Of a stretch of DNA of 64,000 nucleotides, positions 7,704 through 64,000 are shown one piece after another. Made by a program: the position numbers and the translations under genes. Location: the sequence record LR745208.1. The stretch is one strand, 5' to 3'. How positions within the stretch are numbered: the first letter of the stretch is position 1; each line of letters starts with the position of its first letter. Under the pieces are notes generated by a model. The model had not been told where the DNA came from. It saw only the letters and a program-made list of their open reading frames with translations, and ran no database searches.

Positions 7704-7727
7704 CCCGCCAAAGGTGTAACTACAATC

Positions 7728-12953: not shown

Positions 12954-12987
12954 AAAGTTGCCTTCTCGTGCCGATAGGGTATTGAGG
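12942..12987 (+). promoter_or_regulatory. sigma28-type promoter cassette
   Basis: motif copy. Confidence 0.8.
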
Positions 12988-36273: not shown

Positions 36274-36408
36274 CAGTACAGTCCGGTGGGACTCGAACCC
36301 ACATCCACGGTTTACAAAGCCGCTGCTCTGCCTGCTGATCTACCTCAATGTAGGTTATCCTAGGTTCCTACACCCACTTCCACCAGCTGAGCTACTTGGA
36401 CTGTACTG
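36274..36408 (-). tRNA. tRNA-Thr(UGU)-like with 52 nt D-loop insertion
   Basis: TAGCTCAGCTGGT..AGAGC, arm GCGGC-TTTGTAA-ACCGT, T arm GTGGG-TTCGAGT-CCCAC. Confidence 0.65.
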
Positions 36409-36409
36409 A

Positions 36410-36612
36410 CTCGATGAAGAATCCCATGTGTGGCCAGGAATTGAACCCAGCTACGGTCAGTCCACACCGACCGTCCCCATCCAGGGGCTAGGGGGAATCG
36501 AACCCCTGCACATCCAACACACACATGAGACTCGGTCGCGGGCAGGGGAGCTGCACCCCTCTAGCTTCATCAGCACCCTTTCGGGCCCCAGAACTCCTGG
36601 GCGGTCCGCGTT
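36410..36612 (-). ncRNA. promoter-driven structured RNA with three T-loop-like hairpins
   Basis: GGTTCAATTCC, GGTTCGATTCC, AGGGG-TGCAGCT-CCCCT, GCCC-GAAA-GGGT. Confidence 0.6.
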
Positions 36613-36616
36613 GTTG

Positions 36617-36662
36617 TTACAAACTACTATCGGTACGGGAAGGTGACTTTTTAGGGAAATCG
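36617..36662 (-). promoter_or_regulatory. sigma28-type promoter driving the RNA cluster
   Basis: motif copy, no RBS/ATG downstream. Confidence 0.8.
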
Positions 36663-38496: not shown

Positions 38497-38868
38497 TCAG
38501 GCCCGACTCCAAGGTCCCTGCTTGGGACTGGAGACCCACTCCAAGGGTTCCCTGCCCAGCTTCCCAGAATCAAAGGTCACGGTAACCAGAGCCAGCCTAC
38601 CAGACAGGGCTTCGGTCCCGCCTATACGAGCGAACTCAAGTGGGACCCCAGCCTCAGTACACAGCTGACGGGCCTGCCCCTCCGCCCGAAGGCAGGCTTG
38701 ATGGTTACTAGGCCCAAGAGACCGCAACTCCTCAACCCCCTCGCTCGCAGAAGCCACACGATCCCTCTCAGCTCGGGTAGGACCCATGTTGGCCAGGAAG
38801 GTAGCAATCACGTCACCGCGTTCCCACGTCGTCTCACTCATGTCCCCTGTTACGCCCTCCGGGGTCAA
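38497..38868 (-). CDS. hypothetical protein
   Basis: ORF. Confidence 0.55.
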   Translation of the reverse strand: MTPEGVTGDMSETTWERGDVIATFLANMGPTRAERDRVASASEGVEELRSLGPSNHQACLRAEGQARQLCTEAGVPLEFARIGGTEALSGRLALVTVTFDSGKLGREPLEWVSSPKQGPWSRA

Positions 38869-38957
38869 AACCTAACCTAAATGGCCCCTGACTCCCTCAC
38901 GGCCTTACGAAATCATTAGGTTTTCTCGGATTGGTCACTTTTGAGGGTCTCGGACAG
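38859..38957. repeat. ~100 bp R2 element, full copy
   Basis: as 35537. Confidence 0.8.
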
Positions 38958-39234
38958 GACCCCGTTCCACGAATCGTCGGTGGCAGTCTGCACCCACCGG
39001 AAACTCTCCCATGTACCCAGGTGCACTGGCGTCACTGTCCTGGTCCCCCCATGCCGCACCACCGTCGATCACAATGGCAAGATACGGGTAGTCCCCCTCC
39101 TGGCTTTGTTCGCCCATACACCGCACCGGGCGCTCACAGATTGCACACTGCGCCTCATCCGACCTGTACGCATGGGCTCTGCCCGTCCCCATCGCGAACG
39201 GAGGAACCGCAAATGATCCATCTGGCCTCTTCAT
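38935..39234 (-). CDS. hypothetical protein ending in R2-encoded DPQK
   Basis: CAIC..C; stop inside R2. Confidence 0.7.
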   Translation of the reverse strand: MKRPDGSFAVPPFAMGTGRAHAYRSDEAQCAICERPVRCMGEQSQEGDYPYLAIVIDGGAAWGDQDSDASAPGYMGEFPVGADCHRRFVERGPVRDPQK

Positions 39235-39289
39235 CCCAATCGCGAGGTGCGGTGTAATAACTTCACACGTCAGTTCATGCCCCGTCCGA

Positions 39290-39335
39290 TTCTCGCGTCT
39301 CGTCGGTATGATGTCTCAACTTTTAACCGAAATCG
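39290..39335 (-). promoter_or_regulatory. degenerate sigma28-type cassette (ACCGACG -10)
   Basis: CGATTTCGGTTAAAAG..CATACCGACG. Confidence 0.55.
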
Positions 39336-39354
39336 GCCATTGCCATATGTGGCC

Positions 39355-39681
39355 CTATACCTCGAAGCTCAGCTCCTTGAACAGGTCCTTCGCAGCCTCA
39401 AGCCCCAGGGCCCGATCAACCACCTCCAGGCGTACCACCCTGCGAAGCCCCTCAACAGCCTCCCTGATCGATGAACAGAACTCGGATGCAAAGGTGGTGA
39501 GATCCCCATCAGGTCCCAAGTCAGCCATGGCACGGTACTCAGGACCAGCTGCCCGGGGATAGACACACACCCGAATTGGTAACCCCCCAAACACACCAAG
39601 CTCGTCCTTGGTCAAGATATGAGGACGATCCTGAGCCTCATCACTGTATTGGATATCTGTCAGCTTGTTCATCATCTTCAT
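39355..39681 (-). CDS. hypothetical protein
   Basis: ATG after cassette. Confidence 0.7.
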   Translation of the reverse strand: MKMMNKLTDIQYSDEAQDRPHILTKDELGVFGGLPIRVCVYPRAAGPEYRAMADLGPDGDLTTFASEFCSSIREAVEGLRRVVRLEVVDRALGLEAAKDLFKELSFEV

Positions 39682-39684
39682 GTC

Positions 39685-39731
39685 ATCACTACCCCTATTG
39701 GTAACGGGAGACCCCACTTTTAGGAAAATCG
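39685..39731 (-). promoter_or_regulatory. sigma28-type promoter cassette (ACCAATA variant)
   Basis: motif copy. Confidence 0.7.
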
Positions 39732-39742
39732 ACCTACTTCGA

Positions 39743-39845
39743 TGCCCACCGGGGTCAAAACCTAACCAAAATGGCCCCCGCTAGCCTTACCGGCTGACGT
39801 AATCATTAGGTTTTCTCGGATTGGTCACTTTTGGGGGTCCAGGAC
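39743..39845. repeat. ~100 bp R2 element, full copy
   Basis: as 35537. Confidence 0.8.
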
Positions 39846-40226
39846 AAGGCCCTCCGTTGGGACTAGATCCCGGCTCCGAAAAAGGACCGGATAGTTCGCC
39901 TCAGGGAGACCTTCCAGGTAGACTGTGTACCGACCGGTGCTGGTACAACATTTCCGGACCTCTCCGTACAGTCCCTTGAAGGGACCCTTTTCACGAACCC
40001 GGACCCGAACGCCACTTCCAGGCTGGAAGGAGCCAATTAGGGTTGCAGGCTCATTGGAAATGGAGCCGGGGACATCTGCCATAAGGATGAGCCTGTCCCC
40101 ATCATCAACCCCAAGACGATGGAGGCCCCGGCGGGCATCCACATCGAGTATGACCTTGGTGTTCCCAGGCATCTTCCCGCTTTGCAGGATCCGCTGCAAT
40201 GACTCGAAAAGTTCTTGGACGGTCAT
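39825..40226 (-). CDS. hypothetical protein (SH3-like C-terminus) ending in R2-encoded LDPQK
   Basis: stop inside R2. Confidence 0.7.
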   Translation of the reverse strand: MTVQELFESLQRILQSGKMPGNTKVILDVDARRGLHRLGVDDGDRLILMADVPGSISNEPATLIGSFQPGSGVRVRVREKGPFKGLYGEVRKCCTSTGRYTVYLEGLPEANYPVLFRSRDLVPTEGLVLDPQK

Positions 40227-40537
40227 CGTACAACCCTCAGAGCGGGCTTCCCTCGCATGGCTACCGGGAGGGGATTGATGACGGCATACCAGCCCGTACA
40301 GAGCTCAGCATACACACCACAAGCCTGGAGGGCTCCATCCATCTCTACCGCACGGTCACCCTCAGGGTCGAAGAAGGGGGCAAGGTTACCTCCTCCATGG
40401 ACCACCACGAGAAGAGCACTGGGATGGACTTGGTTCCACTCCCCCACAGAGGCATTCCATTCCTTGGGGGTGTAGAACTTACCGTCAGGAATATCCCCAA
40501 CGAGGTTCTGAACCACTTGTCGGAGCTTGAGGGTCAC
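40223..40537 (-). CDS. paralog of 13579..13938
   Basis: VVVHGGG..GVYAELCTGWY. Confidence 0.7.
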   Translation of the reverse strand: MTLKLRQVVQNLVGDIPDGKFYTPKEWNASVGEWNQVHPSALLVVVHGGGNLAPFFDPEGDRAVEMDGALQACGVYAELCTGWYAVINPLPVAMRGKPALRVVR

Positions 40538-40818
40538 AGCCAGCGACCCTTGGACGGGGAAAGGATCGTGTCGACCCCATTCAGGGTCGAGTAGGCAGAG
40601 ACCACTGCCCGGCCATCCAGGAACATGACCTTGGCAAGGGTCACCTCTCCCGCCAGGAAGGCCAGCCCCATCTTGGTCCTGATATCCTGGGTGACCAGGA
40701 AAAGCTTCCACTCAGGACCGTCCCAGTGCCCCTTGTACTGAGGGTACCGGGCATTCTGAAGCTCCGCATTCCTGCGAAGCCGGACAATCCGCTCAGCTGG
40801 ATCCTTGGGTGTGGTCAT
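40534..40818 (-). CDS. hypothetical protein
   Basis: ATG after cassette. Confidence 0.75.
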   Translation of the reverse strand: MTTPKDPAERIVRLRRNAELQNARYPQYKGHWDGPEWKLFLVTQDIRTKMGLAFLAGEVTLAKVMFLDGRAVVSAYSTLNGVDTILSPSKGRWL

Positions 40819-40823
40819 CTTAA

Positions 40824-40868
40824 CCTCACTACCCTATCGGCACGAGAAGACAACTTTTTAGTGAAATC
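40824..40868 (-). promoter_or_regulatory. sigma28-type promoter cassette
   Basis: motif copy. Confidence 0.8.
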
Positions 40869-41072
40869 CTACGGTGGCCCTAGTACCGGCTCGATCAAGT
40901 TGACCATTTTCCCACAAGCTGCGGGGGAACACCCATCCGAACAGCCCCTGTCGGCAATCCTCCAAACCTCACGTAGAACCGCATAGGCGGCATCCCGCTC
41001 TCGAAGGATCCGTTCCATCTTCTCGTAGGCTAAAGAGGGGAGGAGTGCAAAATCATCATCATCCGTGAGCAT
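40869..41072 (-). CDS. hypothetical protein
   Basis: ORF. Confidence 0.55.
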   Translation of the reverse strand: MLTDDDDFALLPSLAYEKMERILRERDAAYAVLREVWRIADRGCSDGCSPAACGKMVNLIEPVLGPP

Positions 41073-41096
41073 GCCCCTATTACCCCCATCCCGTAT

Positions 41097-41196
41097 CCCA
41101 CCGGACCCAAAACCTAACCAAAACAGCTCCGCCTACCCCACATCACTGACGGAACTATTGGGGATTTTGTCGGAGTGTGGTTTTGACCCCGGTGGG
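41097..41196. repeat. R2-related element with two left arms in inverted orientation
   Basis: CCCACCGGACCCAAAACC ... GGTTTTGACCCCGGTGGG. Confidence 0.7.
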
Positions 41197-41493
41197 ACAG
41201 GCAATCCCCATGTTGGCCATGATGGCAGCCTCTCGCTGTTCATCAGGCACCCCAAATGTCATGGCCTTCGCTTCCTCCCTACCCCTAGTAGGTGCCTGCA
41301 TCCTATGTAGCTCCTCCCTCAGGAACCACATGGGCTCACCCTCTCCCTCAAGCTGTACTAGAACTTGGCTGCTACCCTCTCGACCCACCACAATTCCATC
41401 CCGGCCATCTATGGCCACCAAGCCAGTCTGGGGAAGACCTGCCTCAGGTCGCCATTGAGAAGCCACTCGAACGGTGTCCCCCAATAGGATCAT
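41155..41493 (-). CDS. SH3-like hypothetical protein
   Basis: LGDTVRV..GIVV. Confidence 0.5.
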   Translation of the reverse strand: MILLGDTVRVASQWRPEAGLPQTGLVAIDGRDGIVVGREGSSQVLVQLEGEGEPMWFLREELHRMQAPTRGREEAKAMTFGVPDEQREAAIMANMGIACPTGVKTTLRQNPQ

Positions 41494-41548
41494 GTCCTGT
41501 AGAGTCTGCTGTCCTAGGGACCGACCCACCCGTGGGATTTTGGTCACT

Positions 41549-42076
41549 TCAGGCGAGTGCAGGACTACTACCCCCCCCATCCACCTTTGGGACATCAGGT
41601 GAGGCAGTGACCCTCTCCAAATGGCGTAGAGCAATCAGCTCAATGTGCCCGTCAGGAAACAGGACCCAAGAAGAGTCCCGTACATCATCCCCCTCAACTA
41701 CAACTGGTAGGAATAGCGGAGGGAGTGGTTCCACTATCACCCCAATCTGAAGATGAACCCGAGCACCCCAGCCATTTGGCCAGTTCACCTTGACCTTATC
41801 CCCTACCAGGATTGGATCCTCCACAGATGCCAGCAAAGTCTCATATTGCTCGTGCACCTCACTGGCCCTACGTACCCTGTTCTGTAACTCCCCCCTGAGG
41901 TCCACAAGGGCCATCTCAAGGGTAGGACCATAACCACAGGCCCCATCAGGCCCATCATCCGCCTCCACCCGATAGTGGGCATCCCATTGCGGGAGATATA
42001 CGTGAACTGCCGTGATGGGAAGTGCACCCCACCTGCCCAATTGGTCCTTGCCTAACTTGTACTCCATGTGTGCCAT
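41549..42076 (-). CDS. hypothetical protein (HicB-like segment plus SH3-like)
   Basis: YRVEAD..GYGPTLEMAL; VGDKVKV. Confidence 0.65.
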   Translation of the reverse strand: MAHMEYKLGKDQLGRWGALPITAVHVYLPQWDAHYRVEADDGPDGACGYGPTLEMALVDLRGELQNRVRRASEVHEQYETLLASVEDPILVGDKVKVNWPNGWGARVHLQIGVIVEPLPPLFLPVVVEGDDVRDSSWVLFPDGHIELIALRHLERVTASPDVPKVDGGGSSPALA

Positions 42077-42078
42077 GG

Positions 42079-42300
42079 CTACTTGCCCCCTACTAGATGA
42101 CGCCTTGCTATGGCATCATGGGTCCGCTCATTACTGACAAAAGTCCCCAGAAGCGCAATCAGCCTGATTCGGGATACACTCACCTGAGAAGCCGTAGCCC
42201 CAAATCGCTCCCTCCCTAATTGCTGGAGGGCCAATCCCGAAACCCGGGAATCCTTGAGCAGTATCTCCACTTCATCCAATGTCAGCTTCTCATAACTCAT
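42079..42300 (-). CDS. hypothetical protein
   Basis: ORF with RBS. Confidence 0.6.
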   Translation of the reverse strand: MSYEKLTLDEVEILLKDSRVSGLALQQLGRERFGATASQVSVSRIRLIALLGTFVSNERTHDAIARRHLVGGK

Positions 42301-42474
42301 TGTGGTTCCTTTGTTTGTGATGTTTGGTAAGGGACTGGCTGGAGACTGTGGAGTTCGGGACTGACTCTGGCCGGAGAGCCCAAGTCAGGTTGAGTTGAGG
42401 GCCAAAGTATTGGCCGGGATTTCAGTTTCAATATTTTTGGGTCCAAAATCATTGGGGCTTTAACTATTTGACTC

Positions 42475-42780
42475 CTACCGACCCGACCCTCGCTCTCCGG
42501 CGTCGGTAGGGTCCTCCCCATCCCTCGAAGGGACCCTGATGTCCCACCCCGTTGTGGCTCCATGGATGAGCCCACAGGACTTGGTTCCTAGGGGGCACAC
42601 GCAGGACAGGACGGGGTTAATCTGGCAAGAGGGGTCTTGTTTGCCCTGTTCTAGTGCCCGGTCTTCACAGGGAATGTGATCCATGCAAATGAACTGACCC
42701 GGATGGGTAATTGGGGAAGCTGCCTTCATGTGAGGCCGAATCTGTTGGGTTCCACAGCGGGCGCATGAGACGAGGGTCAT
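42475..42780 (-). CDS. Cys-rich hypothetical protein
   Basis: CARC, C.D..C. Confidence 0.55.
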   Translation of the reverse strand: MTLVSCARCGTQQIRPHMKAASPITHPGQFICMDHIPCEDRALEQGKQDPSCQINPVLSCVCPLGTKSCGLIHGATTGWDIRVPSRDGEDPTDAGERGSGR

Positions 42781-42984
42781 TTACCTACTTGCTCTTCCTA
42801 GGGTTCCGATGATGATCTCTTTACAAGTAGGGCATTGGACCAGATACTCACTTGGGCCTGCCGCACACTCTCCAAGGGTATGGGACGATTCCCACACCTG
42901 GAACTCGACCAAGGTCAAACAGTACTGGCAGGTACCGTGGCAGATTGCATCTTGGGGTCTTGTTCCTTCACGTAGTACAATCAT
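42781..42984 (-). CDS. zinc-ribbon small protein
   Basis: CQYC..CPTC. Confidence 0.7.
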   Translation of the reverse strand: MIVLREGTRPQDAICHGTCQYCLTLVEFQVWESSHTLGECAAGPSEYLVQCPTCKEIIIGTLGRASR

Positions 42985-43220
42985 GGGCTCACCAGGATGG
43001 GAGCACCGCAGTCCCCGTCAAAGGTAGGGTCATTTGGGTCCAGGTGGCGGTCTTCTGGGAGGGTCTGCCAAGCTGTAGGTGCCTTGAGGGTGGCCTTACG
43101 TGGGGGTGTGGGTGCCAGGACAGCTACGGTGATCATGGCACCCAGGGCGATGGCAGCCAGGGTCAGGAAGATGAACTCCCAGGGGTTGTCCCAAGGGTCA
43201 TTTGGGTGTGTCTCAGTCAT
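42981..43220 (-). CDS. small membrane protein
   Basis: single hydrophobic segment. Confidence 0.6.
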   Translation of the reverse strand: MTETHPNDPWDNPWEFIFLTLAAIALGAMITVAVLAPTPPRKATLKAPTAWQTLPEDRHLDPNDPTFDGDCGAPILVSP

Positions 43221-43249
43221 GGGTTTAGTTACCCCTCCTGTAGTTGTTC

Positions 43250-43357
43250 CAGACCCCCCCAAAACCGACACCTTCTGGATTCTCGGCAAATTGTCCAATG
43301 ATTTCGTAGTGGGCTATAGTAGGTGGTCTCTATTCGGGTGTGGTTTTGGCCCCGTGG
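43250..43357. repeat. R2 element, reverse orientation
   Basis: CCAATGATTTCGTAG core; GGTGTGGTTTTGGCCCCGTGG arm. Confidence 0.75.
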
Positions 43358-43451
43358 AGCATGACGGGGTGGTTGGGGGTGGGGTTTTTGGGATTGTGGG
43401 TCCTTATGGGAGGGGTCCTATATTGTGGGTTTGTGGCAACCCTGAGTTTTG

Positions 43452-43498
43452 AAATCGTTTCAAGCGATTCGTTTCGAGCGAATCGCTTGAAACGATTT
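43452..43498. repeat. perfect 20 bp inverted repeat, 7 nt loop
   Basis: AAATCGTTTCAAGCGATTCG / CGAATCGCTTGAAACGATTT. Confidence 0.9.
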
Positions 43499-43872
43499 GT
43501 CCCAATTGGAATCGTTTGAATGTATTTGAGTTTCAATAACTTGTGGGGTCCCAGAGGGGTTTCCCAACGGCTAGTGGGTGGTCCATTTTGGACCAGTCCT
43601 GTTACCTGATAGGTTAAGGGGACTTAGTCACCAAGGTGTTCTATTAATGGGTCCAAGTACTTGGGGTTGTCGGTCTTAGGGATACCCATTCATCGCAGAC
43701 TTGGCGTGTAGTGCAGATGAGGAGTGCCCACACACCCGAGCCAAAGATGATGGCGAGGAGGATGCCAAAGCCTATGTAGGAGGGCCAGTCTTCGTTCCAC
43801 ACGTTTGAGCGGCCCTGGTCATTGGGTGTTTGGGGGGTGGTGGGACCCATGGTTGGCGGTAGTTGGGTGGGG

Positions 43873-44214
43873 TCATTGCTCTGGGGGTCTTGGGATGTCT
43901 GGCCAACATTGGGGGCCTTGGGAGTTGAGGATCTGTCGTTGGTCTTTGGTGAGGGCGTCCCAAGCTGCATCCATCTGGTCAAGGATGTCGTCTTCCAGTT
44001 CCATGTCAGCCTGACGGGCGGTGGTGGTTCTTGTGCCATGGAAGGATGGGTCATCGAGGGAGGCTTCTTTGGCCCGGATGTCCCATAGTTGGCATTGGAG
44101 GTTCCGGTAGGTTTTGAGGGGGTCTGTGGGGTCGTCCATATCATTTAGTTCCAGCTGGTAGTGTTTTGGACAGGTGGTGTTCCAGCTGGCTACGGAGTAG
44201 GTCTTCCGCTTCAC
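43873..44214 (-). CDS. hypothetical protein
   Basis: EDDILDQMD..W. Confidence 0.55.
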   Translation of the reverse strand: MKRKTYSVASWNTTCPKHYQLELNDMDDPTDPLKTYRNLQCQLWDIRAKEASLDDPSFHGTRTTTARQADMELEDDILDQMDAAWDALTKDQRQILNSQGPQCWPDIPRPPEQ

Positions 44215-44596
44215 TTAGATTGAAGAAGTTGGAGACACAGGGGATATCGGTACGTGGGTTGTCATGGGTGTACATGAGGAACAGCCGTCCGGCCCCATAG
44301 AGCCATACCCCCAGGGTGTTTCTCTGCCCTCCTCCGGTCAGGACTATTGGGCGCAGCCCCTTGCAACCACAGCCACAGGGGGTCCAGTCGAAGTCGAATT
44401 TGTAGTCGGGGGTCTTGGGTGCTTTGAGGGTCATGAGCTTGCTGGCACCTCTGGGCTTACGGGGTCGTGGTGTCTTTTTGGGCTTCCAGGTCACGCGGGT
44501 GTTGCAGGCGTGGTTATCTCGATGGTGTGGGGAAAGGGTACACATTAGCCCATCTTTGTTGCGTTCGCCACAGGTGGCCAAGTTGGTGGGGGTCAA
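44141..44596 (-). CDS. hypothetical protein
   Basis: ORF. Confidence 0.5.
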   Translation of the reverse strand: MTPTNLATCGERNKDGLMCTLSPHHRDNHACNTRVTWKPKKTPRPRKPRGASKLMTLKAPKTPDYKFDFDWTPCGCGCKGLRPIVLTGGGQRNTLGVWLYGAGRLFLMYTHDNPRTDIPCVSNFFNLSEAEDLLRSQLEHHLSKTLPAGTK

Positions 44597-44753
44597 TTAG
44601 TTTCTCCTGGTATGGCGCGTTCCACGTAGATCCCCCCGAGGAATGTTTGGAGGCAAGCAAGGGCACCCCACCACCCCAGGTCATGGACGAGGATGGTGCT
44701 TAGTGCAATAAGCCCCCATACTCCTGCCAGTAGCAATCTTCGAGTTGAGTTGC

Positions 44754-50130: not shown

Positions 50131-53100
50131 TCATGGCAGGTGATTTACTCCCCTCTCGGTCGTGTTGGGCACATCAACCTCAACTTCGGCCCCCTCAGTC
50201 TCATCGACCCTGGTTAGCTTCCGGGCTGGCTCCCCCACATCCACCCGGACCTTCTCGTCAGCCATTCCTGAGACCATGTCCATGACTAGCCTGAGGGCCG
50301 GTTTAGTGACCAGATCCGCCAGGGAGTCACCAAGATCGGCTAGGCCATCTTCCCGCATTGATTGGGCAATGGAGGCGAGTTTGCTGCTTGGTTCATAGCT
50401 CATGTCAAAAAGCTTCGGGCCCACGGCATCAGGGTCCGAAAGGTACCCTGAGTCGGGAGTTGAGTTGCGGGTTGCCATTGTTGAGTGCTTAGCCCAAGGG
50501 GTTGAGGCGAGTCCAACACCTCCCAGGACCTTAGTCAGGGCGAGCCCCTGAGGGCCCGCCAGGAACTTGAGTGCCTTGCCCCTATTGGCCCCCAGGGTTT
50601 GGGTCAGGAACTCCACAAGGGGGTCCCTAGCCGCCTTGGCGAGCTGTCTACCAGCGACGGTTACCATGGCTGACTTGGCTTCGGTTTTGGCCCGTGCCTT
50701 GAGGCGTTGGGTCGTCGTGGCAGTGGCTGGGGCGTGGAGGACGCCCACCTTGGGCATCAGGTTAGCCAGGGGGGTAGTCTTTGGGTGCTTCGAGTAGATG
50801 TCTACAATGTTGTGCAGCTCCTCTCTCCAGCCAGATGTCAGTGCCGACCCCCATGTGGCCACCACCCAGGCCTCCAAGTCATGGAGGTTCATGGGTCCCC
50901 GATGGGATACCCAGGAAGATGTCTTGGTAGACCACACTTGGTAACCGGTCACAGTTGTACCAATTGTATCAAAGGACCACATCCCCACGTCAAGAGACCA
51001 GCCCTCGTGGATCATGTAGGAGGCTAGGTCTGTTCCTTTGAAGTCTTGCGCGAGGGCAATGGGGCACCCCTCAATGGCATCCACTGTCCCTTCTTCGTCG
51101 GGATCATACCCATCCTCGTCATCATAGCGTTTCCTGGCGTCCCGCATGAGCGTGTTCAGGTCGGCTGCGTCAATGGGGTTCCAGAAGGTCTTCTCGTCTA
51201 TTTTTGGGTAGACAGCATTGGAGATATATGGGATTGGGTCCTTCAGCCATATACGGGGCCCCAGGTGGCGGTAGTCGGCCTGTTTGGTGTTCCAGAGGGC
51301 GTACTCCCAGGTTTCCTTATCGGCACCTTCGTCAAAGCGTGCCCGGAGGGATAGGTTGTTTTTGGTAAGCCAAATCAGGAAAGATGTCCCCACGGCCAAC
51401 TCCTCCTTATGGTGATCTCCGCCCGAGATAGCGGTGGCCTGGGGGGACAAGCGATTCATGTCGGCAGATATATTCTCATTCTCAGGATTCTTGGTACGGG
51501 CTTGGTTCCTGGCTTGGCGTAGGATGTCATCCAGTTCCTCCTGCTGTGCTACGGTGAGGCCTAGGATTGGGATGCCGGTGCCCGCGGATGGCTTGGTCCA
51601 CAGGTAGCCAGTGTGCCCCTCCAGCCACCCTACAAGGTCGCTAAAGGGCATCCATTTGGTCAGGGTCTCCACGTTGGTTACGTTGGTCATGGCTGGAGTC
51701 ACGGTGATTCGATAAGTAAGCCTGTAGGTCCAGCAGTCTTTTGTGGCGTTTGCCTCCACCTTAATCCCCGTCAACAGGTCTTTAACAGACACGGTTGGGG
51801 GCAGGGATCCATCATCCTTGGGGGCAGGTTGCTTCGACCATTGCTGTGCAAGCCATGTCTCGGTACGGGCGAGGAGGTCTGGGGATACTTTGGCTCGGGA
51901 GGCCTTGGCCATCTGGTTTGTCGGCGCCCATGTAGAATCCCTTTTAGCTAGCCCTTCGAGCCAGACTGTCGGGTGGTAGCTCCCTGTATAGCCTTCCGGA
52001 TATGCTTCCTTCCACTCGGCTGCTAGGGATTCCAGGGTATCTTTGGTCTCGGTAGTCATGGGTCCCTTTTCCTGCGCACGAGCGGCATCCTGTATCCAAG
52101 CCTCGGTACGAGTCACAAGGTCAGCAGAAGAGGTGAAAAAGTGTGGCCCTATCGTACCGATTTTGTTCAATGGGATCCAATTGTGATCCAGCCCATCAGC
52201 CTCCTTCGACACAAACATCTCAGCGGGTGCCACCCATGAGTGGCTGGTGTCTTTGGATAGCAGCCCGAGGAGCCATTCCTTGGGGCCCTCCTCCTTGCTC
52301 CAATAGGAGGATGGTTTGGCCTTCAGCCACTCTCTTGCCAAGGATTCCAAGGTATCTATGGCCCTGGTGGCCAACCGGGAGGATACGGCCGACTCGGATT
52401 TGGAGTTCTTCTCCGTTTTGAGTTGACGGAATGTTTCCTGAGAGATACTGGGGTTGCTGGAGAGGGGGAGGGTCCATGAGGCTTTGTCCACCAATGCTTT
52501 GTCATTCCACCAGCCCTCGAAGGCGGGGGTGGATAGGGTTATGAGAAGCTTACCTTTATGGTCTTTCAGGGATTGACGTACCTCAGGATGTAGGTGCTCC
52601 GCCTCATCGGCGATGACCAGATCGAACTCTTCACCCGCATAGAACTTGCTACTAAAAGTCCCTTTGCTGATGACCTCAGGGGGGTCCGTGGTACTGGGAG
52701 ACAAGTAGAGGACTCGTTTGCCCTCAGCCAGGGCTGCGTTGGCAACCGCTACGGCGAGAGTGGTTTTCCCCGCCCTCCGGTCAGCACTCACCACGTTGAC
52801 TCTATAGCCGCTTCGGGCAATTTGCCGCTGTATATGGCTCAGATATTCAAAATGGTCGAGTTTAGGGGCAGCTTCAGCTGTCTCAGCTGCGTGCTGCCCT
52901 TTTAGGATACAGTCATCGACGGAATCAACAGCTTGGTGCAGGGCATCAAGGTTGTCGTGGGTCCACTCTGCCCCCCAGTGGCGGGTCATTAGGTCCTGGA
53001 TCTCTTTGCATAAACGGACCCCAGTTGAGGTTCGGAGATCGGTCTCACCTCTACCATCGAGGGAGTAGGTCAGGTCATATGTAGAGTCAAGAGCACCCTT

Positions 53101-53673
53101 CAAGGTGACTGTGAAGCTAGCTTTGTTGGGGTCCGTGAAGTGGTGGGTAAAGGTGGCCTGGGCTGTCCTAGGCTCGGTTTGTGTTTGTTCACAGCCTTTG
53201 GCAATGTCCGAGACAACGTTTTGAAGTAGCTTCTCATTGTCCGGTGTCCAAAGGATTTTCCAGTGGCTCGACATCCACTCTTTGGCGGCGAGTAGGTTGC
53301 TGAACTGTATGGGGTGTCGGGTTGTGTGAGGATCCCCTGTTCGGCTTATCCCATAGGATATCCTCCCCGTACTTGCGTCTAACAGATAGCCGGTCAACGT
53401 GAATGAATGGGTCGCGGGAATGGTGGCCTTACCAAATTCGATCAGTTTGATGACCCGATCTTCGAGATCTCGGCGGGCTGTTCCAGAACCCAGGTTGGGT
53501 ACAATTATCCCCGTTGGACGGTCTGCGTAGCAACCTACAATATCGTCAAAGAAGTCCTGTCTCCATTGCGCTGGAGACCTACCAAGGGCATTGCGCAGGT
53601 CTACAATAAGGTCCTCTAGCCCGTCTATTTTGAGAGGGCGTCGGAACTCAGGCAATGGAACGGAAGGGATCAT
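50131..53673 (-). CDS. 1180 aa mosaic protein with terminase-like P-loop ATPase domain
   Basis: RRAGKTT, VIADEA, STP..SNPSI; internal duplicated domain. Confidence 0.7.
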   Translation of the reverse strand: MIPSVPLPEFRRPLKIDGLEDLIVDLRNALGRSPAQWRQDFFDDIVGCYADRPTGIIVPNLGSGTARRDLEDRVIKLIEFGKATIPATHSFTLTGYLLDASTGRISYGISRTGDPHTTRHPIQFSNLLAAKEWMSSHWKILWTPDNEKLLQNVVSDIAKGCEQTQTEPRTAQATFTHHFTDPNKASFTVTLKGALDSTYDLTYSLDGRGETDLRTSTGVRLCKEIQDLMTRHWGAEWTHDNLDALHQAVDSVDDCILKGQHAAETAEAAPKLDHFEYLSHIQRQIARSGYRVNVVSADRRAGKTTLAVAVANAALAEGKRVLYLSPSTTDPPEVISKGTFSSKFYAGEEFDLVIADEAEHLHPEVRQSLKDHKGKLLITLSTPAFEGWWNDKALVDKASWTLPLSSNPSISQETFRQLKTEKNSKSESAVSSRLATRAIDTLESLAREWLKAKPSSYWSKEEGPKEWLLGLLSKDTSHSWVAPAEMFVSKEADGLDHNWIPLNKIGTIGPHFFTSSADLVTRTEAWIQDAARAQEKGPMTTETKDTLESLAAEWKEAYPEGYTGSYHPTVWLEGLAKRDSTWAPTNQMAKASRAKVSPDLLARTETWLAQQWSKQPAPKDDGSLPPTVSVKDLLTGIKVEANATKDCWTYRLTYRITVTPAMTNVTNVETLTKWMPFSDLVGWLEGHTGYLWTKPSAGTGIPILGLTVAQQEELDDILRQARNQARTKNPENENISADMNRLSPQATAISGGDHHKEELAVGTSFLIWLTKNNLSLRARFDEGADKETWEYALWNTKQADYRHLGPRIWLKDPIPYISNAVYPKIDEKTFWNPIDAADLNTLMRDARKRYDDEDGYDPDEEGTVDAIEGCPIALAQDFKGTDLASYMIHEGWSLDVGMWSFDTIGTTVTGYQVWSTKTSSWVSHRGPMNLHDLEAWVVATWGSALTSGWREELHNIVDIYSKHPKTTPLANLMPKVGVLHAPATATTTQRLKARAKTEAKSAMVTVAGRQLAKAARDPLVEFLTQTLGANRGKALKFLAGPQGLALTKVLGGVGLASTPWAKHSTMATRNSTPDSGYLSDPDAVGPKLFDMSYEPSSKLASIAQSMREDGLADLGDSLADLVTKPALRLVMDMVSGMADEKVRVDVGEPARKLTRVDETEGAEVEVDVPNTTERGVNHLP

Positions 53674-57138: not shown

Positions 57139-57576
57139 TCAGGTCCTCGGCTTCGGCCGGATCACTTCCAGCATCGCATTGAGACGGTACACCCCATGGG
57201 ACCCGATCTTGGGGGTCACGTCCATCCCATCCAGGAAATTGTCCACCAGCTCACTGGCATTGGTGTACCCCATCGAATTGGCCAGCAGAAACAGGATCAA
57301 CCGGACCGTGTCCTCACTCAGCACATTGTTGGCCATGCACTCCCGCAGGTGATTGTTGTCATCCTGGATGGCCCTCAGTTCCCTGGTAGCCCTCAGGAGG
57401 GCTCGGCCATCAACGTCATGGGCGTCCCGCTCGTGGGTGTACTGGTCACGAAGCTCACGGAGTTGCCTCTTCAACTCGGTCTCAGCTTGTGTGTCCCGCA
57501 TGGCTTCGCAGTATCCTCCTGGTTCACAATCTGAACAGGGGCCTCCGTGGATATTGTGACAATTCATGCAACTCAT
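57139..57576 (-). CDS. hypothetical protein, coiled coil
   Basis: ATGA overlap. Confidence 0.7.
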   Translation of the reverse strand: MSCMNCHNIHGGPCSDCEPGGYCEAMRDTQAETELKRQLRELRDQYTHERDAHDVDGRALLRATRELRAIQDDNNHLRECMANNVLSEDTVRLILFLLANSMGYTNASELVDNFLDGMDVTPKIGSHGVYRLNAMLEVIRPKPRT

Positions 57577-58202
57577 GTGGTTTTTGCATCCTTCCAGTCG
57601 TCAACAAAACGATAGCTGGTATCCTCCCCCCATAGGTATAAGGAGCATCGCTTCAGGGGGGATCCCGGTACCTGGGGTGTGCGGCCAAGGTCCAGTCCCA
57701 CCATGATGAATTCGGACGCTCTTTCCAAACCCACCCACCGAGAGATGTAGCTGCGCAGAAAAGCCTCCTGAAGCTCGAACCAGAAGGGACGCTTTCGAGA
57801 AAGCAGCGCGTCCAGTCGGGGAAGCATGGCCTTTGGCACCTTGGGGAGGTAGTCCTCGGTGAGGATGAGGATCAGGTCATCCCCTTCCAACCCAAAGTTG
57901 GCGAAGTATGTCTGTCCCGTGTCCGTGTTGATGGCCAGGGTGTAGCTGAATTGCTTGACCCTACCACCCCAGATAGCTCCCGCGAACTTGTCGGGCAGCC
58001 TCTCGTTGCCATAGTTGTCCAGAACCAGCAGGTTGATGGGGTTGGAGCCTGTACCATGTACTTTGAAGTTCCCAAGGTGGTCCCCGTCCGGCACCATGGT
58101 ACAGGCAGTCTGAGGGATCCAGTCGAAGGTGTTGTAGACCCTGCGCAAGATTCGGCCTTCGGCCTTGTGGGGGGAGATTATCGTGTGGGTGGTTATGGAC
58201 AT
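57573..58202 (-). CDS. hypothetical protein
   Basis: 209 aa ORF with RBS. Confidence 0.75.
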   Translation of the reverse strand: MSITTHTIISPHKAEGRILRRVYNTFDWIPQTACTMVPDGDHLGNFKVHGTGSNPINLLVLDNYGNERLPDKFAGAIWGGRVKQFSYTLAINTDTGQTYFANFGLEGDDLILILTEDYLPKVPKAMLPRLDALLSRKRPFWFELQEAFLRSYISRWVGLERASEFIMVGLDLGRTPQVPGSPLKRCSLYLWGEDTSYRFVDDWKDAKTT

Positions 58203-58254
58203 GTTGTTTCTCTTACACCTTCAAGGGGTGGTACATGCTTCAATCCTCTCATTT

Positions 58255-58362
58255 TGGCAACTTGCCTGGGATTTGAACCCAGATCCCGGCAAGAGTTGGG
58301 GGTGGGGTCTAGAACACCTTCCAACTCTCACCATGTGCTAACCAGTCTTGCACCAACAAGTT
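58255..58362 (-). tRNA. 108 nt tRNA with 47 nt anticodon arm and encoded CCA
   Basis: AACTTGT/GCAAGTT-G-CCA, D stem GTGC/GCAC, T arm CTGGG-TTCAAAT-CCCAG. Confidence 0.75.
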
Positions 58363-58364
58363 CA

Positions 58365-59210
58365 GGCCCCTACCCGGTTCTGCCCCGGGCCTCCCACCAT
58401 TCTGGGTAATGCGACTACACACCGTTAGGCCGTACTGGGTGGCGTGGGACATAACCACTAACGCTAGCCACCATCACGATTGAGGCAGTTTGTGGACCCC
58501 GCCGGGGTATTCCCTGACACAGACCACACTCTGCCCAAACATTAACCCCGTGCAGCAATTTCCACGGGACGGGTCCAACTGCGCCTTTTGGGTGACCTTT
58601 CGCTAGCAGGTGTCTCATTGTCCACGGGAGGCCCCGCTTCATCCGTTTGAGACTCGACCCAGTCAGTGGAATGCCTCCCACGTCTACCCAGGCCACCGCT
58701 AACTCCATCCTGTGCTGCCCTCAGACTGCCCCAAGAATCTTCACTGGGACCTTGGACCAACTGTAACGACAACACAAGGCATCATTGCGGAAGTACGCGC
58801 ACTCTATTCCGCTTCCCTCTCTCCCTGCGCGCTATGCCAGGAACTAAACCCTGGCTACCTGGAGAGGAATAAGCTGTTGGTGGGTTGATCCAGGCCAATA
58901 CTGGGGCCCGGACATTTCACTTGGGGGGGCGCCCACCGGCATCCTCCTTGCGCTACATCTTTCAGCGACCGGGCGGTTGTCTCGCATACCTGCCCAGTTA
59001 TCGCTTCTGGTTCGCCATTGGAACTGCTTACCCTCCGACATCAATCTAACTTCATCGATCAATCCGACTCAATCCACACATGGGGTGCCCCGTAGGGCGT
59101 AAGTTGGGTGGGATCTAACTCGGCGGGGCTCTTGCGTTTTTCATCATTGTAGGGTTCCTCTGCGTACGTTTACTGGTGCCTTGTTGGCTGGGACTCTTCT
59201 CTGTTCCTTA
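58365..59210 (-). ncRNA. candidate large structured ncRNA (~850 nt)
   Basis: own promoter, no convincing ORF, multiple hairpins, tRNA immediately 3'. Confidence 0.65.
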
Positions 59211-59252
59211 CACACCCTATCGGCACAAGAAGACCAATTTTTAGCAAATTCG
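59205..59252 (-). promoter_or_regulatory. sigma28-type promoter driving the large ncRNA/tRNA
   Basis: CGAATTTGCTAAA-N15-GCCGATAG. Confidence 0.8.
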
Positions 59253-59259
59253 TATGACC

Positions 59260-59874
59260 CTACGTGACCACATCTTCGTCTGGCTCGGCCAGTATGTACT
59301 GGTCCTCTGGAAAGCAGACGTCCACCCGGTAGGCGGACTCCTCATCATCTGACTCGTCCTGATCCTTTTTGATCACCACCAGGACTTTTTCGGATGCCGG
59401 GCACGGAAGGGACCCCACGAACATGTGGCGGCCCCCCAGGACTCCAACCACCACGTCCCCGGCATTGAGGTCCTTGGCCAATACCTTGATGGCATCCGGC
59501 CCCACCCGCTTGATCCCCAGGGGCTCCGCGATGGCGTTCAGGGCACCTGCCCGTTCAGACGGGGGGTCCACCGGGGCGTCTACCCCAATGGCTTTGCGGA
59601 GCTTCCCAATTTGGGACTCCAAATCCCCAATGTCCTTCTGGATTGCCTGGACCAAAGTCCCATAGAGAAGGTTGAGGGCAGCCTCCCCAGTTTTGACAGG
59701 CTGTCCTGACGAGAGGGGGATGCCTCGGTGCCTGATGACAGGGGACCCAACATTTGCAAAAACACCCCCGTCAGCCTTGTTGTCGCTGATCTCAATTCGG
59801 GTATCATGCCCCAAGAATCGCATGAGAAGGAAACACTCGCCTGTTGTCCGTTGCCTATTCATTGTCTGCTCCAC
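59260..59874 (-). CDS. hypothetical protein with shared CF.LMR.LG domain
   Basis: paralogous module. Confidence 0.75.
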   Translation of the reverse strand: MEQTMNRQRTTGECFLLMRFLGHDTRIEISDNKADGGVFANVGSPVIRHRGIPLSSGQPVKTGEAALNLLYGTLVQAIQKDIGDLESQIGKLRKAIGVDAPVDPPSERAGALNAIAEPLGIKRVGPDAIKVLAKDLNAGDVVVGVLGGRHMFVGSLPCPASEKVLVVIKKDQDESDDEESAYRVDVCFPEDQYILAEPDEDVVT

Positions 59875-61802: not shown

Positions 61803-61848
61803 TCCTTACACCCTATCGGCATGGGGGCACCAATTTTTAGAGAAATCG
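61803..61848 (-). promoter_or_regulatory. sigma28-type promoter cassette
   Basis: motif copy. Confidence 0.8.
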
Positions 61849-63222: not shown

Positions 63223-63471
63223 TTACTTACGCCCCGACACCCCAGAGTTGGGCCACGAATGCACCAAGCAGACCTGTTCCCAGCCCTTGCTCCTTGGGGG
63301 AGGGGCGTCACATTCGATGCAGTAGGGTTTGACCCGGCGTGACTCCGGTGGCCTATTGATGACCATACGTGTGGTGTCACGCTCTTTGGTTGCGGTTAGG
63401 GCCCTAACCTCGGTGGCAGACTCCTGGAGCAAGTCATTCAGGTCGTACCAGTCCCAACGGTCTATCACCAT
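63223..63471 (-). CDS. hypothetical protein
   Basis: ORF. Confidence 0.5.
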   Translation of the reverse strand: MVIDRWDWYDLNDLLQESATEVRALTATKERDTTRMVINRPPESRRVKPYCIECDAPPPRSKGWEQVCLVHSWPNSGVSGRK

Positions 63472-64000
63472 TCACCCCGCATGTATGCCTTCAGGTTCCA
63501 TTTGGTACCAAGAATGTGATCCGTTACAACTCCGTCCTGCATCCTGACTGTCCTTCTCTTATCCGCTTTGGATCCCGCCCCAACCTGTTGCTTACGGTCG
63601 GCTGCCCGGGTTGACGTGGCCTGGGTGTTCGCAGCCTCCCAGAGGCGTGCCCGTAGTAGGGACAGGGCAGATGCCAAGTTCTGCTTCTGGCTACGCTCGG
63701 TCTGGCATCGAACCATGAGCCCTGTAGGCAAATGTCTTACTTGTACGGCGCTATCAGTAGTGTTGACTCCTTGTCCGCCACATCCGCTCGCTCTCGTAGC
63801 TGCCCATTCAATATCCTGGGGCCGAATCACGAGTTGGGTCTCGTTCGGAGGTTCAAGGGTTGCCACCGTAATTGTGCTACTGTGGATTCTCCCATTGCTG
63901 GTCCGCTGCACCCTGTGGCCACCTGCCTCATTGGCGAAGGCATCCTTGGCGCCCTTCCCTGATACCTCTATGATGCACAGCCCTGGGGATTGCTCAATGA
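63465..64000 (-). CDS. class I peptide release factor (RF1-like), 5' end outside window
   Basis: EAGGHRVQR, GRIHSS, SGCGGQGVNTTDSAV, QTERSQ, VTDH. Confidence 0.88.
   Translation of the reverse strand, partial: IEQSPGLCIIEVSGKGAKDAFANEAGGHRVQRTSNGRIHSSTITVATLEPPNETQLVIRPQDIEWAATRASGCGGQGVNTTDSAVQVRHLPTGLMVRCQTERSQKQNLASALSLLRARLWEAANTQATSTRAADRKQQVGAGSKADKRRTVRMQDGVVTDHILGTKWNLKAYMRGEW

What the first reader, a model, noticed from the sequence alone, without database searches (positions are those of the whole stretch)
58365..59210. ~850 nt promoter-driven non-coding region: candidate giant structured RNA
Seen: promoter at 59205-59252 faces ~850 nt with only short, weak ORFs, then the long-arm tRNA. 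Stems include GCCC-TACG-GGGC (59087-59098, UNCG-type), GCCAGG/CCTGGC (58836-58855), CCCGTG/CACGGG (58547-58568), GCGGAA/TTCCGC, and a degenerate cloverleaf with CCCGG-GGCAGAA-CCGGG near 58370-58430. Known: GOLLD and ROOL are large ornate RNAs found in phages next to tRNAs. Inference: a GOLLD/ROOL-class or new large RNA.
Basis: partly seen in the sequence, partly recalled or inferred. Interest (0 to 1): 0.85.

Follow-up and report, generated by a model that had tools for sequence, protein, structure and literature searches.

The report
Phage small-RNA locus, not giant RNA
The 1-kb gene-free stretch is a real promoter-driven non-coding unit of a 485-kb phage, but only 85 bases of it are conserved elsewhere: a small pseudoknotted RNA, absent from Rfam 15, that other large phages carry inside their tRNA gene clusters.

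Summary
Window 58203-59259 is a 1057-nt gap between two minus-strand genes. It has no coding signal in any frame. It lies downstream of one of 59 copies of a phage-specific promoter motif, which elsewhere sits directly before a start codon. The window is bases 1-64000 of uncultured huge phage LR745208.1.

The interpretation as a GOLLD/ROOL-class or new giant structured RNA is not supported:
- No Rfam family matches, even at E<=10.
- The 844-nt core folds no better than shuffles (z = -1.15).
- No relative of the whole stretch exists in any collection searched.

One 85-nt segment (58785-58869, minus strand) belongs to a conserved RNA family. It has three helices and a pseudoknot. Across 16 sequences 95% of cells are paired and 20 of 27 pairs show compensatory changes. 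The family occurs in Myxococcus phage Mx1, Streptomyces Stanwilliamsviridae phages and uncultured phage contigs of 49-436 kb, mostly inside tRNA arrays. It is not in Rfam 15.

The unit ends in a tRNA-like element (58255-58362). Its acceptor, D and T arms and CCA are canonical, but its anticodon arm is 47 nt long.

Best reading: a precursor carrying discrete small RNAs that are released by tRNA-processing enzymes. The other ~760 nt are unexplained.

The parts
59207..59252 (-). Copy of the phage's repeated promoter/5'-leader motif. It keeps the AAGGAA Shine-Dalgarno-like tail but no start codon follows.
   Evidence: Iterated nhmmer over LR745208.1 finds 59 copies. Orientation follows the gene strand, and an ATG lies 5-25 nt downstream in nearly all other copies. 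The sigma-70 consensus scan finds nothing here.
58870..59206 (-). 5' non-coding segment (337 nt). No relatives and no coding signal. It contains the UACG hairpin at 59087-59098 and a 10-codon ORF (59148-59116) with a good SD.
   Evidence: local z between -1.7 and +0.3
58785..58869 (-). Conserved 85-nt pseudoknotted small RNA module. P1: 58861-58867 with 58816-58822. P2 hairpin: 58849-58855 with 58836-58842. Pseudoknot: 58826-58832 (GCGCGCA) with 58795-58801 (UGCGCGU). P3 hairpin: 58807-58812 with 58787-58792.
   Evidence: Covariance model R1 scores it 94.8 bits, and it is the only copy in the 485-kb genome. Covariation. Independent RNAalifold prediction. Relatives.
58363..58784 (-). 3' non-coding segment (422 nt). 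No relatives and no coding signal. It includes the cloverleaf-shaped but statistically unremarkable stretch 58365-58431 and the CCCGUG/CACGGG hairpin.
58255..58362 (-). tRNA-like element. 7-bp acceptor AACUUGU/GCAAGUU; U8; D arm GUGC/GCAC with a GG loop; T arm CUGGG-UUCAAAU-CCCAG; discriminator G; encoded CCA. In place of the 17-nt anticodon arm there is a 47-nt arm (13+4 bp) with the loop UUCUAGACCC.
   Evidence: Read from the sequence. Fold z = -2.0. ARAGORN calls it only at a 90% threshold, as tRNA(CUA) with a 14-nt 'intron'. ARAGORN at default and the Rfam tRNA model do not call it.
57573..58202 (-). Downstream gene (209 aa, or 174 aa as called in public data). It is probably co-transcribed, because no terminator-like site lies between the promoter and it on the minus strand.

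Best explanation
The gap is a non-coding transcription unit, not one giant RNA.

**Shown:**
- One of the phage's 59 near-identical promoters points into about 1 kb without any coding signal.
- Inside lies an 85-nt RNA with three helices and a loop-to-junction pseudoknot. It belongs to a family conserved in unrelated large phages, usually within tRNA arrays.
- The unit ends with a tRNA-like element. Its acceptor/T/D 'elbow' and CCA are intact, and only its anticodon arm is aberrant.

**Inferred:**
- The promoter makes a long precursor that also reads into gene 57573-58202.
- Host or phage tRNA-processing enzymes recognise the tRNA-like element: RNase P at its 5' end, and 3' trimming or CCA maintenance at its 3' end. 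This cuts the precursor and separates the non-coding part from the downstream mRNA.
- The 85-nt module is a stable small RNA whose function depends on its pseudoknotted fold. Either it is a trans-acting factor linked to tRNA biology, or it is a processing element of tRNA-type precursors.
- The remaining ~760 nt are lineage-specific leader or spacer.
For: - **Non-coding.**
- **Promoter family.** 59 copies, and this copy lacks an ATG.
- **No terminator.** There is no terminator-like site on the minus strand between 59207 and 58203.
- **Retrieval of the module family.** The first lead was the only non-self blastn hit of the region, in the tRNA array of Myxococcus phage Mx1. Structure-agnostic DNA patterns then retrieved more. 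Blastn found 47 Streptomyces phage records.
- **Model scores.** Model R1 scores 47.8-103.5 bits in 27 other loci (15, 12) and 94.8 bits here.
- **Structure.** On the MAFFT alignment A2, 95.3% of cells pair, 17 of 27 pairs change on both sides, and 0 of 500 shuffles reach this. On the 16-sequence alignment A4 the figures are 95.4% and 20 of 27; with the 3' partners slid by 1-3 columns only 38-55% pair. RNAalifold recovers P1-P3 on its own.
- **Pseudoknot.** Its two variable positions covary: UU/AA in 14 sequences, CG/CG in the window, UG/CA in L083. Those positions were N in the search patterns.
- **Context.** The module is on the same strand as the tRNAs. A tRNA ends 1-7 nt before P1 in Mx1, L083, L084 and L088. 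A tRNA or tRNA-like element starts 3-5 nt after P3 in L083, L085, L088, L089 and L093.
- **A possible parallel.** In L085 the module is followed at once by another long-arm tRNA-like element with G-CCA.
- **tRNA-like elbow.** U8, A14, G18G19, G53-C61, U54U55C56 and A58 are read directly from the sequence.
Against: - There is no transcript data, so the promoter's activity, the precursor and every processing step are inferred.
- In the window the module is not next to a tRNA. It lies 337 nt from the promoter and 422 nt from the tRNA-like element, so tRNA-type processing cannot define its ends here.
- The ~760 unexplained nt sit in a genome that is about 92% coding. That argues for some function that this explanation does not supply.
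- The phage has no relatives at this locus. Conservation of the flanks could therefore not be tested at all, and absence of evidence is weak.
- The Rfam tRNA model and default ARAGORN do not recognise the tRNA-like element. RNase P recognition of it is assumed.
- The sequence patterns used to collect the family fixed part of the pseudoknot. Five of its seven pairs never vary and say nothing either way.
Confidence: 0.6

Rival explanations
1. One large (~0.95 kb) structured RNA of a new class, in which the 85-nt module is only one domain and the tRNA-like element forms the 3' end. This would be analogous to GOLLD or ROOL, which sit near phage tRNA islands.
For: - It is a promoter-driven, coding-free kilobase in a dense genome.
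- With the tRNA-like element included, the minus strand folds better than shuffles (z = -2.54 with 20 shuffles) while the plus strand does not (z = -0.57).
- GOLLD and ROOL are large phage RNAs near tRNA islands (PMC12286853).
Against: - Without the tRNA-like element, z is -1.15 with 120 shuffles, and local windows average about -0.2.
- No Rfam hit.
- In all other phages the module stands alone, flanked within a few nt by tRNAs or genes.
- Nothing else in the stretch matches those loci or GenBank phages.
Confidence: 0.13
2. A decayed remnant. A former small tRNA/small-RNA cluster or former early genes have eroded, leaving one functional module, one crippled tRNA and a long functionless 5' UTR for gene 57573-58202.
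For: - The promoter keeps its SD-like tail but has lost any start codon.
- The tRNA-like element looks like a tRNA(CUA) with a disrupted anticodon arm.
- A cloverleaf-shaped stretch at 58365-58431 has no statistical support.
- A second promoter copy at 36662 drives another ORF-free stretch full of tRNA-like fragments.
- The flanks have no excess structure.
Against: - No residual codon signal is seen in any frame.
- No tRNA-model hits at E<=10 are seen in the flanks.
- The genome is otherwise compact.
- The sequence is identical in independent assemblies from other samples, although those are the same strain.
- The long arm of the tRNA-like element is a clean 13+4-bp helix, not a random disruption.
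Confidence: 0.2
3. Hidden protein-coding sequence: small proteins, recoded stops or frameshifting.
For: - Public gene callers called a 97-aa ORF at 58415-58708.
- The phage carries a suppressor-type tRNA(UUA) at 7629-7705 and a gene for an RF-1-domain protein nearby.
- A 10-codon ORF with a good SD lies at 59148-59116.
Against: - All three stop codons occur in every frame.
- The codon-usage score is negative in all six frames.
- No Pfam or PHROG hits.
- The rest of the genome is about 92% coding under the standard code.
Confidence: 0.04
4. A DNA-level element: a replication origin, packaging site or attachment site.
For: It is a large intergenic region. The 3' half of a tRNA-like sequence could serve as an att core.
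Against: - No iterons, tandem repeats or significant inverted repeats.
- No AT-rich tract; GC is about 55%, like the genome.
- No GC-skew turn here.
- No integrase nearby.
- The tRNA-like 26-mer is found only in this phage in IMG/VR.
Confidence: 0.03

Closest known systems
GOLLD (RF01998) and ROOL (RF03087) large ornate RNAs
   Same: They are non-coding RNAs of phages and prophages, often near tRNA islands, of unknown function. GOLLD exceeds 800 nt (PMC12286853). The size of the gap and its link to tRNA-type elements are similar.
   Different: - No covariance-model match, even at E<=10.
- No excess folding energy.
- Only 85 nt are conserved, and those form an autonomous small unit in other phages.
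Theta ribozymes (minimal HDV-like self-cleaving ribozymes next to phage tRNAs; PMC10879173)
   Same: They are small pseudoknotted RNAs embedded in phage tRNA clusters within a few nt of tRNA ends, with many next to tRNA-Met. Relatives of the module abut tRNA ends, and it lies upstream of tRNA-Met in the Streptomyces phages and L083.
   Different: - The helix order here is P1-5', P2 hairpin, PK-5', P1-3', P3-5', PK-3', P3-3'. That is not the nested double pseudoknot of HDV-like ribozymes (my reading).
- No HDV-like Rfam hit.
- The hosts differ: Streptomyces, Myxococcus and environmental phages rather than gut Bacteroidota/Bacillota phages.
- Self-cleavage is untested.
Stable small RNAs co-transcribed with phage tRNAs (T4 species 1 and 2 RNAs, rnaC/rnaD; from my own knowledge)
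   Same: They are tRNA-sized structured RNAs of unknown function, encoded within a phage tRNA cluster and matured from a common precursor by tRNA-processing enzymes.
   Different: No sequence comparison was made here. The T4 RNAs are not in Rfam, and no pseudoknot of this kind is known to me for them.
tRNA-like processing signals at the end of long non-coding RNAs (MALAT1/mascRNA; from my own knowledge)
   Same: A long non-coding transcript is followed by a tRNA-like element that RNase P could cleave, which would define the 3' end of the upstream RNA.
   Different: That system is eukaryotic. No triple-helix or A-rich stabiliser is seen here, the analogy is functional only, and processing is untested.

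Membership tests
GOLLD RNA (Rfam RF01998) | Match to the family covariance model (sequence plus ornate multi-domain structure) | tested here: not met
   No hit at gathering score over the whole window, nor at E<=10 over 57900-59500.
ROOL RNA (Rfam RF03087) | Match to the family covariance model | tested here: not met
   No hit.
GOLLD/ROOL-like 'large ornate RNA' as a kind | Conservation and covariation over several hundred nt | tested here: not met
   Only 85 nt have relatives. No relative of the phage exists at this locus in the phage collection, IMG/VR, JGI metagenomes, GTDB genomes or the 5.8-billion-protein set.
Group I / group II introns, RNase P RNA, tmRNA, known small ribozymes (Rfam 15) | Match to any of the family models | tested here: not met
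   Nothing at E<=10 in 57900-59500. Nothing overlaps the module in 11 related loci at gathering score, nor at E<=10 on the L084 copy.
HDV-like / theta ribozymes | Nested double pseudoknot (P1, P1.1, P2, P3, P4) with cleavage at the 5' end of P1 | tested here: not met
   The helix order supported by covariation is different, and there is no Rfam HDV-like hit. Cleavage is not testable here.
HDV-like / theta ribozymes | Position within about 5 nt of a tRNA 3' end | tested here: inconclusive
   A tRNA ends 1-7 nt before P1 in 4 of 16 loci (Mx1, L083, L084, L088). This is not so in the window or in most other loci.
   The window copy scores 94.8 bits (E about 1e-19) over the full length 1-85.
   The window has GCGCGCA / UGCGCGU, a compensated CG/CG variant of the usual UU/AA. 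All 7 pairs are kept in 16 of 16 sequences.
   The nearest ARAGORN or Rfam tRNA in the window is more than 20 kb away. Only the aberrant tRNA-like element lies 422 nt downstream. L081 and L086 also lack nearby tRNAs. This is a typical context, not a strict requirement.
tRNA (RF00005), for 58255-58362 | Cloverleaf with a 5-bp anticodon stem and 7-nt loop; match to tRNA models | tested here: not met
   No Rfam tRNA hit at E<=10, and ARAGORN at default finds nothing. It is called only at a 90% threshold, as tRNA(CUA) with a 14-nt insert. The acceptor, D and T arms and CCA are canonical.

The most novel reading that the evidence does not exclude
The 85-nt module is a new class of catalytic or processing RNA. 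It could be a self-cleaving ribozyme, or a cis element that directs maturation of neighbouring tRNA-type RNAs. Large phages of Streptomyces and Myxococcus and uncultured phages would then use it in their tRNA clusters. The window's long-arm tRNA-like element, and the one that directly follows the module in L085, would be its partner substrate.
Probability: 0.12. Interest if true: 0.85.

Novelty: new variant of a known kind. Interest (0 to 1): 0.55.

Why it matters
Small structured RNAs hidden in phage tRNA clusters are an emerging theme: GOLLD, ROOL and theta ribozymes. This one has a compact pseudoknotted fold with strong covariation and no Rfam entry.

It is present in cultivable phages: Mx1 and the Streptomyces phages Jay2Jay, Mildred21 and Tomas. 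Its function can therefore be tested directly in laboratory hosts.

For this window, the result replaces a speculative 'giant RNA' with a defined 85-nt element plus a defined open question, namely what the other ~760 nt do. It also supplies a 59-copy promoter motif that organises the phage's presumed early genes.

Tried and rejected
- **Stop-codon recoding.** Rejected: all stop types occur in all frames, and no frame has coding signal.
- **Pseudogene of a paralogue.** tblastx of the region against the whole 485-kb genome finds nothing beyond the promoter motif.
- **Paralogous non-coding copies in the genome.** None. Only the 46-nt promoter recurs.
- **Synteny-based homologues.**
  - Both flanking proteins are orphans: only identical copies in 5.8 billion proteins, only self in IMG/VR.
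  - The neighbouring 345-aa and 1180-aa proteins hit only self in GenBank phages.
- **Other assemblies** (L031, L078). They are 99.98-100% identical, so they give no variation.
- **Promoter-motif scans.** IMG/VR, JGI metagenomes and GTDB genomes returned only the same phage or single matches that showed no DNA similarity to the phage.
- **Decayed tRNA array.** ARAGORN at relaxed thresholds and the Rfam tRNA model find nothing in the flanks.
- **Repeats, iterons, CRISPR-like units in the region.** None.
- **Weak blastn hits of the flanks.** The hits in Klebsiella, Rhizobium, Streptomyces and Pseudomonas phages have E between 0.1 and 5, and I judged them to be chance. The Vibrio and Streptococcus hits of the module consensus lie in coding sequence, so I also judged them to be chance.
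- **A wider pseudoknot pattern.** Freeing four pseudoknot pairs brought no new members.
- **Literature.** No paper in the held library contains the module's conserved strings. The catalogue of 10,006 viral candidate RNAs (PMC10690425) could not be checked because its tables are not held.
- **The two long-arm tRNA-likes** (window and L085). They share only generic tRNA features.
- **A recurring protein partner of the module.** None found.

Full report
**Origin of the window**

The window is bases 1-64000 of LR745208.1, an uncultured 485,034-bp phage. It equals IMG/VR UViG_3300025030_000038. I fetched the rest of the genome in pieces for within-genome comparisons. There are no N in the window.

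**Checking the observation**

The finding lies in a 1057-nt gap (58203-59259) between two minus-strand ORFs, 57573-58202 and 59260-59874.

- Every frame on both strands has 8-19 stops, and all three stop codons are represented. Stop-codon reassignment therefore cannot open a frame. This was worth checking because the phage has a tRNA with anticodon UUA.
- A codon-usage log-odds score trained on 169 long ORFs of the genome gives +20 to +30 per 150 nt in the flanking genes. It is negative in all six frames across 58250-59260.
- The short ORFs hit no Pfam or PHROG family.
- tblastx against the whole genome finds no paralogue.
- By a crude measure the genome is 92.5% coding. This is its third-largest ORF-free gap, and one of the two larger gaps is full of tRNAs.

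The stretch is genuinely non-coding and unusual for this genome.

**The promoter**

Iterated nhmmer finds 59 copies of a ~46-nt motif, cGATTTCnCTAAAAAGTnnCCnTCnCGTrCCGATAGGGTrtTGAGGA.

- The motif is always oriented with the local genes.
- Copies are concentrated in 1-160 kb and 464-485 kb of the record.
- In nearly all copies an ATG follows within 5-25 nt.
- It does not resemble the sigma-70 consensus. I infer that a phage-specific or phage-modified polymerase recognises it.
- The copy at 59207-59252 keeps the SD-like AAGGAA but has no start codon behind it.
- The only other clear exception is the copy at 36662-36627. It leads into 340 ORF-free nt packed with tRNA-like fragments.
- No terminator-like site lies on the minus strand between the promoter and ATG 58202.

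**Is it one large structured RNA?**

- Rfam 15 gives nothing for GOLLD, ROOL, introns, RNase P, tmRNA or ribozymes, at gathering score on the window or at E<=10 on 57900-59500.
- A first fold of 58254-59210 gave z = -2.54 on the minus strand. That used only 20 shuffles and included the tRNA-like end.
- With 120 dinucleotide shuffles, the 844-nt core (58363-59206) gives z = -1.15 on the minus strand and -0.17 on the plus strand.
- 150-nt windows average about -0.2 on both strands.
- Nine sub-segments range from -2.0 to +0.6.
- There are no repeats of note.

Thermodynamics therefore gives no support for a giant ornate fold, although it cannot exclude one.

**Search for relatives**

- The flanking proteins have only identical copies in 5.8 billion proteins and in IMG/VR.
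- Neighbouring larger proteins hit only this record among 50,697 phage records.
- Other assemblies that carry the locus are 99.98-100% identical.
- Scans for the promoter motif in IMG/VR, JGI metagenomes and GTDB genomes returned the same phage or single matches that showed no DNA similarity to the phage.

**The lead that changed the picture**

The only non-self blastn hit of the gap was 53 nt at 83% identity (E = 5e-5) in Myxococcus phage Mx1. It lies in the Mx1 tRNA array, 6 nt after tRNA-Asn, on the tRNA strand, under a 38-aa antisense 'hypothetical protein'.

The pairwise alignment showed two things. One hairpin stem is completely exchanged (GCGGAA/UUCCGC against GUCCCG/CGGGAC) around a conserved 14-nt loop. 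An enclosing stem has a U-A to C-G swap.

I then collected more members:

- Patterns built only on the single-stranded conserved letters retrieved 10 IMG/VR contigs of 49-436 kb.
- A later pattern added two more metagenomic contigs and the Streptomyces phage isolates.
- blastn of a consensus found 47 Streptomyces phage records (Stanwilliamsviridae; Jay2Jay, Mildred21, Tomas, Naboo and others). In the three annotated records I opened (Jay2Jay, Mildred21, Tomas) the match lies in an unannotated gap of the tRNA array; Naboo is unannotated.
- A covariance model (R1) scores 94.8 bits for window 58785-58869 (minus strand), 71-103.5 bits for the first set and 47.8-55.2 bits for the Streptomyces-type set.
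- R1 finds exactly one copy in the 485-kb genome.

**Structure of the module**

- P1 is 7 bp. It encloses the hairpin P2 (7 bp, loop UUNAGU) and the strand GCGUUCA.
- A second hairpin, P3 (6-7 bp), follows. Its loop reads UAGAG-UGAACGU-AN.
- The underlined seven loop letters (UGAACGU) pair with GCGUUCA to form a pseudoknot.
- On the MAFFT alignment of 12 sequences, 95.3% of cells pair and 17 of 27 pairs change on both sides. No shuffle out of 500 reaches any of the five measures.
- On 16 sequences the figures are 95.4% and 20 of 27. With the 3' partners slid by 1-3 columns only 38-55% pair.
- RNAalifold recovers P1-P3 independently.

Caveats:

- The search patterns fixed five of the seven pseudoknot pairs. 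Only the two central pairs are informative there. They covary as UU/AA in 14 sequences, CG/CG in the window and UG/CA in L083.
- Alignment A4 was fitted to P1-P3, though not to the pseudoknot.

**Context of the module elsewhere**

- It is always a single copy, on the strand of the neighbouring tRNAs.
- A tRNA ends 1-7 nt before P1 in Mx1, L083, L084 and L088.
- A tRNA or tRNA-like element begins 3-5 nt after P3 in L083 and Tomas (both tRNA-Met), L088 (tRNA-Val), L089 (a tRNA-like element with a CCA anticodon that ARAGORN and Rfam do not call) and L085.
- In L081 and L086 it sits between protein genes, with no tRNA nearby.
- No protein family recurs next to it.
- No Rfam family overlaps it in 11 loci, nor at E<=10 on two copies.
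- No paper in the held library contains its conserved strings.
- A 2023 catalogue of 10,006 unnamed viral candidate RNAs could not be checked.
- Nothing else in the window's gap matches any of these loci or GenBank phages.

**The 3' end of the unit**

58255-58362 (minus strand) has these features:

- A 7-bp acceptor stem, U8, and a 4-bp D stem with an A14...GG...A21 loop.
- A 5-bp T stem with the loop UUCAAAU, discriminator G and an encoded CCA.
- In place of the 17-nt anticodon arm, a 47-nt arm of 13+4 bp with the loop UUCUAGACCC.

Default ARAGORN and the Rfam tRNA model do not call it. ARAGORN at a 90% threshold calls it tRNA(CUA) with a 14-nt insert.

The intact elbow is what RNase P and the 3'-end enzymes recognise in tRNAs (established knowledge). 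I therefore infer that it works as a processing signal, whatever else it does.

In L085 the module is followed 4 nt later by another tRNA-like element with a 9-bp extension of the anticodon arm and G-CCA. The two elements share only generic tRNA letters. The pairing of module and long-arm tRNA-like element is therefore a two-case observation, not a finding.

**Conclusion**

The gap is best read as a promoter-driven non-coding precursor carrying discrete small RNAs, not as a GOLLD/ROOL-class giant RNA.

- Firm: it is non-coding; the promoter belongs to a family; Rfam membership fails; and there is an 85-nt conserved pseudoknotted RNA.
- Inferred: transcription itself, read-through into gene 57573-58202, and processing at the tRNA-like element.
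- Open: the function of the module and of the ~760 unconserved nt.

The rivals cannot be excluded without transcript data or a relative of the phage. They are one large lineage-specific RNA, or a decayed array leaving a long leader.

Noticed in passing
window 36285-36662 (minus strand): A second promoter copy (36662-36627) drives 340 ORF-free nt holding three T-arm-containing tRNA-like pieces. The last (36285-36343) matches the Rfam tRNA model at 35.6 bits but only over positions 7-64. It is closed by an 11-bp outer stem and carries an extra D-arm-like insert. The fold has z = -2.7.
   Followed up: partly
whole genome; in the window e.g. 1600-1645, 12942-12987, 40824-40868, 61808-61848: A 59-copy, ~46-nt promoter/leader motif with an invariant GTrCCGATAGG core. 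It sits directly before start codons and is concentrated in 1-160 kb and 464-485 kb of the record. It probably marks one temporal class of genes.
   Followed up: partly
outside the window: LR745208.1 about 435,238-435,370 (L011 21238-21369, + strand): Inside a 1240-nt ORF-free gap there are two copies, about 102 nt apart, of a hairpin repeat ending in GTGGATTGAAACA. It looks like CRISPR-repeat units (a mini-array or solitary repeats).
   Followed up: no
window 7629-7705 (+); window 63465-64000 (minus, runs off the end): A tRNA with anticodon UUA, which would read UAA (ARAGORN; Rfam 29.5 bits). About 4 kb upstream of the finding is a gene whose product carries PCRF/RF-1 release-factor domains, according to public gene calls on L078. 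Yet the genome looks about 92% coding under the standard code.
   Followed up: partly
window 59116-59148 (minus strand): A 10-codon ORF, MMKNARAPPS-stop, preceded by AGAGGAA at 7 nt. It is the first ATG after the promoter. It could be a leader peptide or chance.
   Followed up: no
L085 2641-2749 (minus strand), IMGVR_UViG_3300045996_001187: A 106-nt tRNA (Rfam 33.5 bits) with a long extended anticodon arm and G-CCA starts 4 nt after the conserved module. This echoes the window's long-arm tRNA-like element.
   Followed up: partly
L082 8153-8517 (minus); L083 1948-2178; L079 382-759 and 2623-2691: Other RNAs in the related phage tRNA arrays: a full bacterial-type RNase P RNA (299.5 bits) in a 363-kb phage contig; a group I intron in a 436-kb contig; and, in Mx1, a tmRNA that the record's feature table for this stretch does not list and that partly lies under a CDS annotated as 'Hef-like endonuclease'. 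Mx1 also has an unannotated tRNA-Cys and tRNA-Pro.
   Followed up: no
L075 = MIBM01000156.1 (MAG 'Spirochaetes bacterium RIFOXYC1_FULL_54_7'): A 1986-nt contig binned with a Spirochaete genome is 100% identical to the phage at about 312.2-314.2 kb. This is either a binning artefact or a hint to host and site.
   Followed up: no
window 50131-53673 (minus strand): A 1180-aa P-loop NTPase-like protein (weak STAND/AAA hits) has three further matching places in the same genome and no relative in GenBank phages.
   Followed up: no
window 38779-44657 against L058 (Ga0209210_1001771): Another sample carries the same phage at 99.6% identity with a 24-nt length difference in this stretch. This is the only strain variation seen, and none of it is at the finding.
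   Followed up: no
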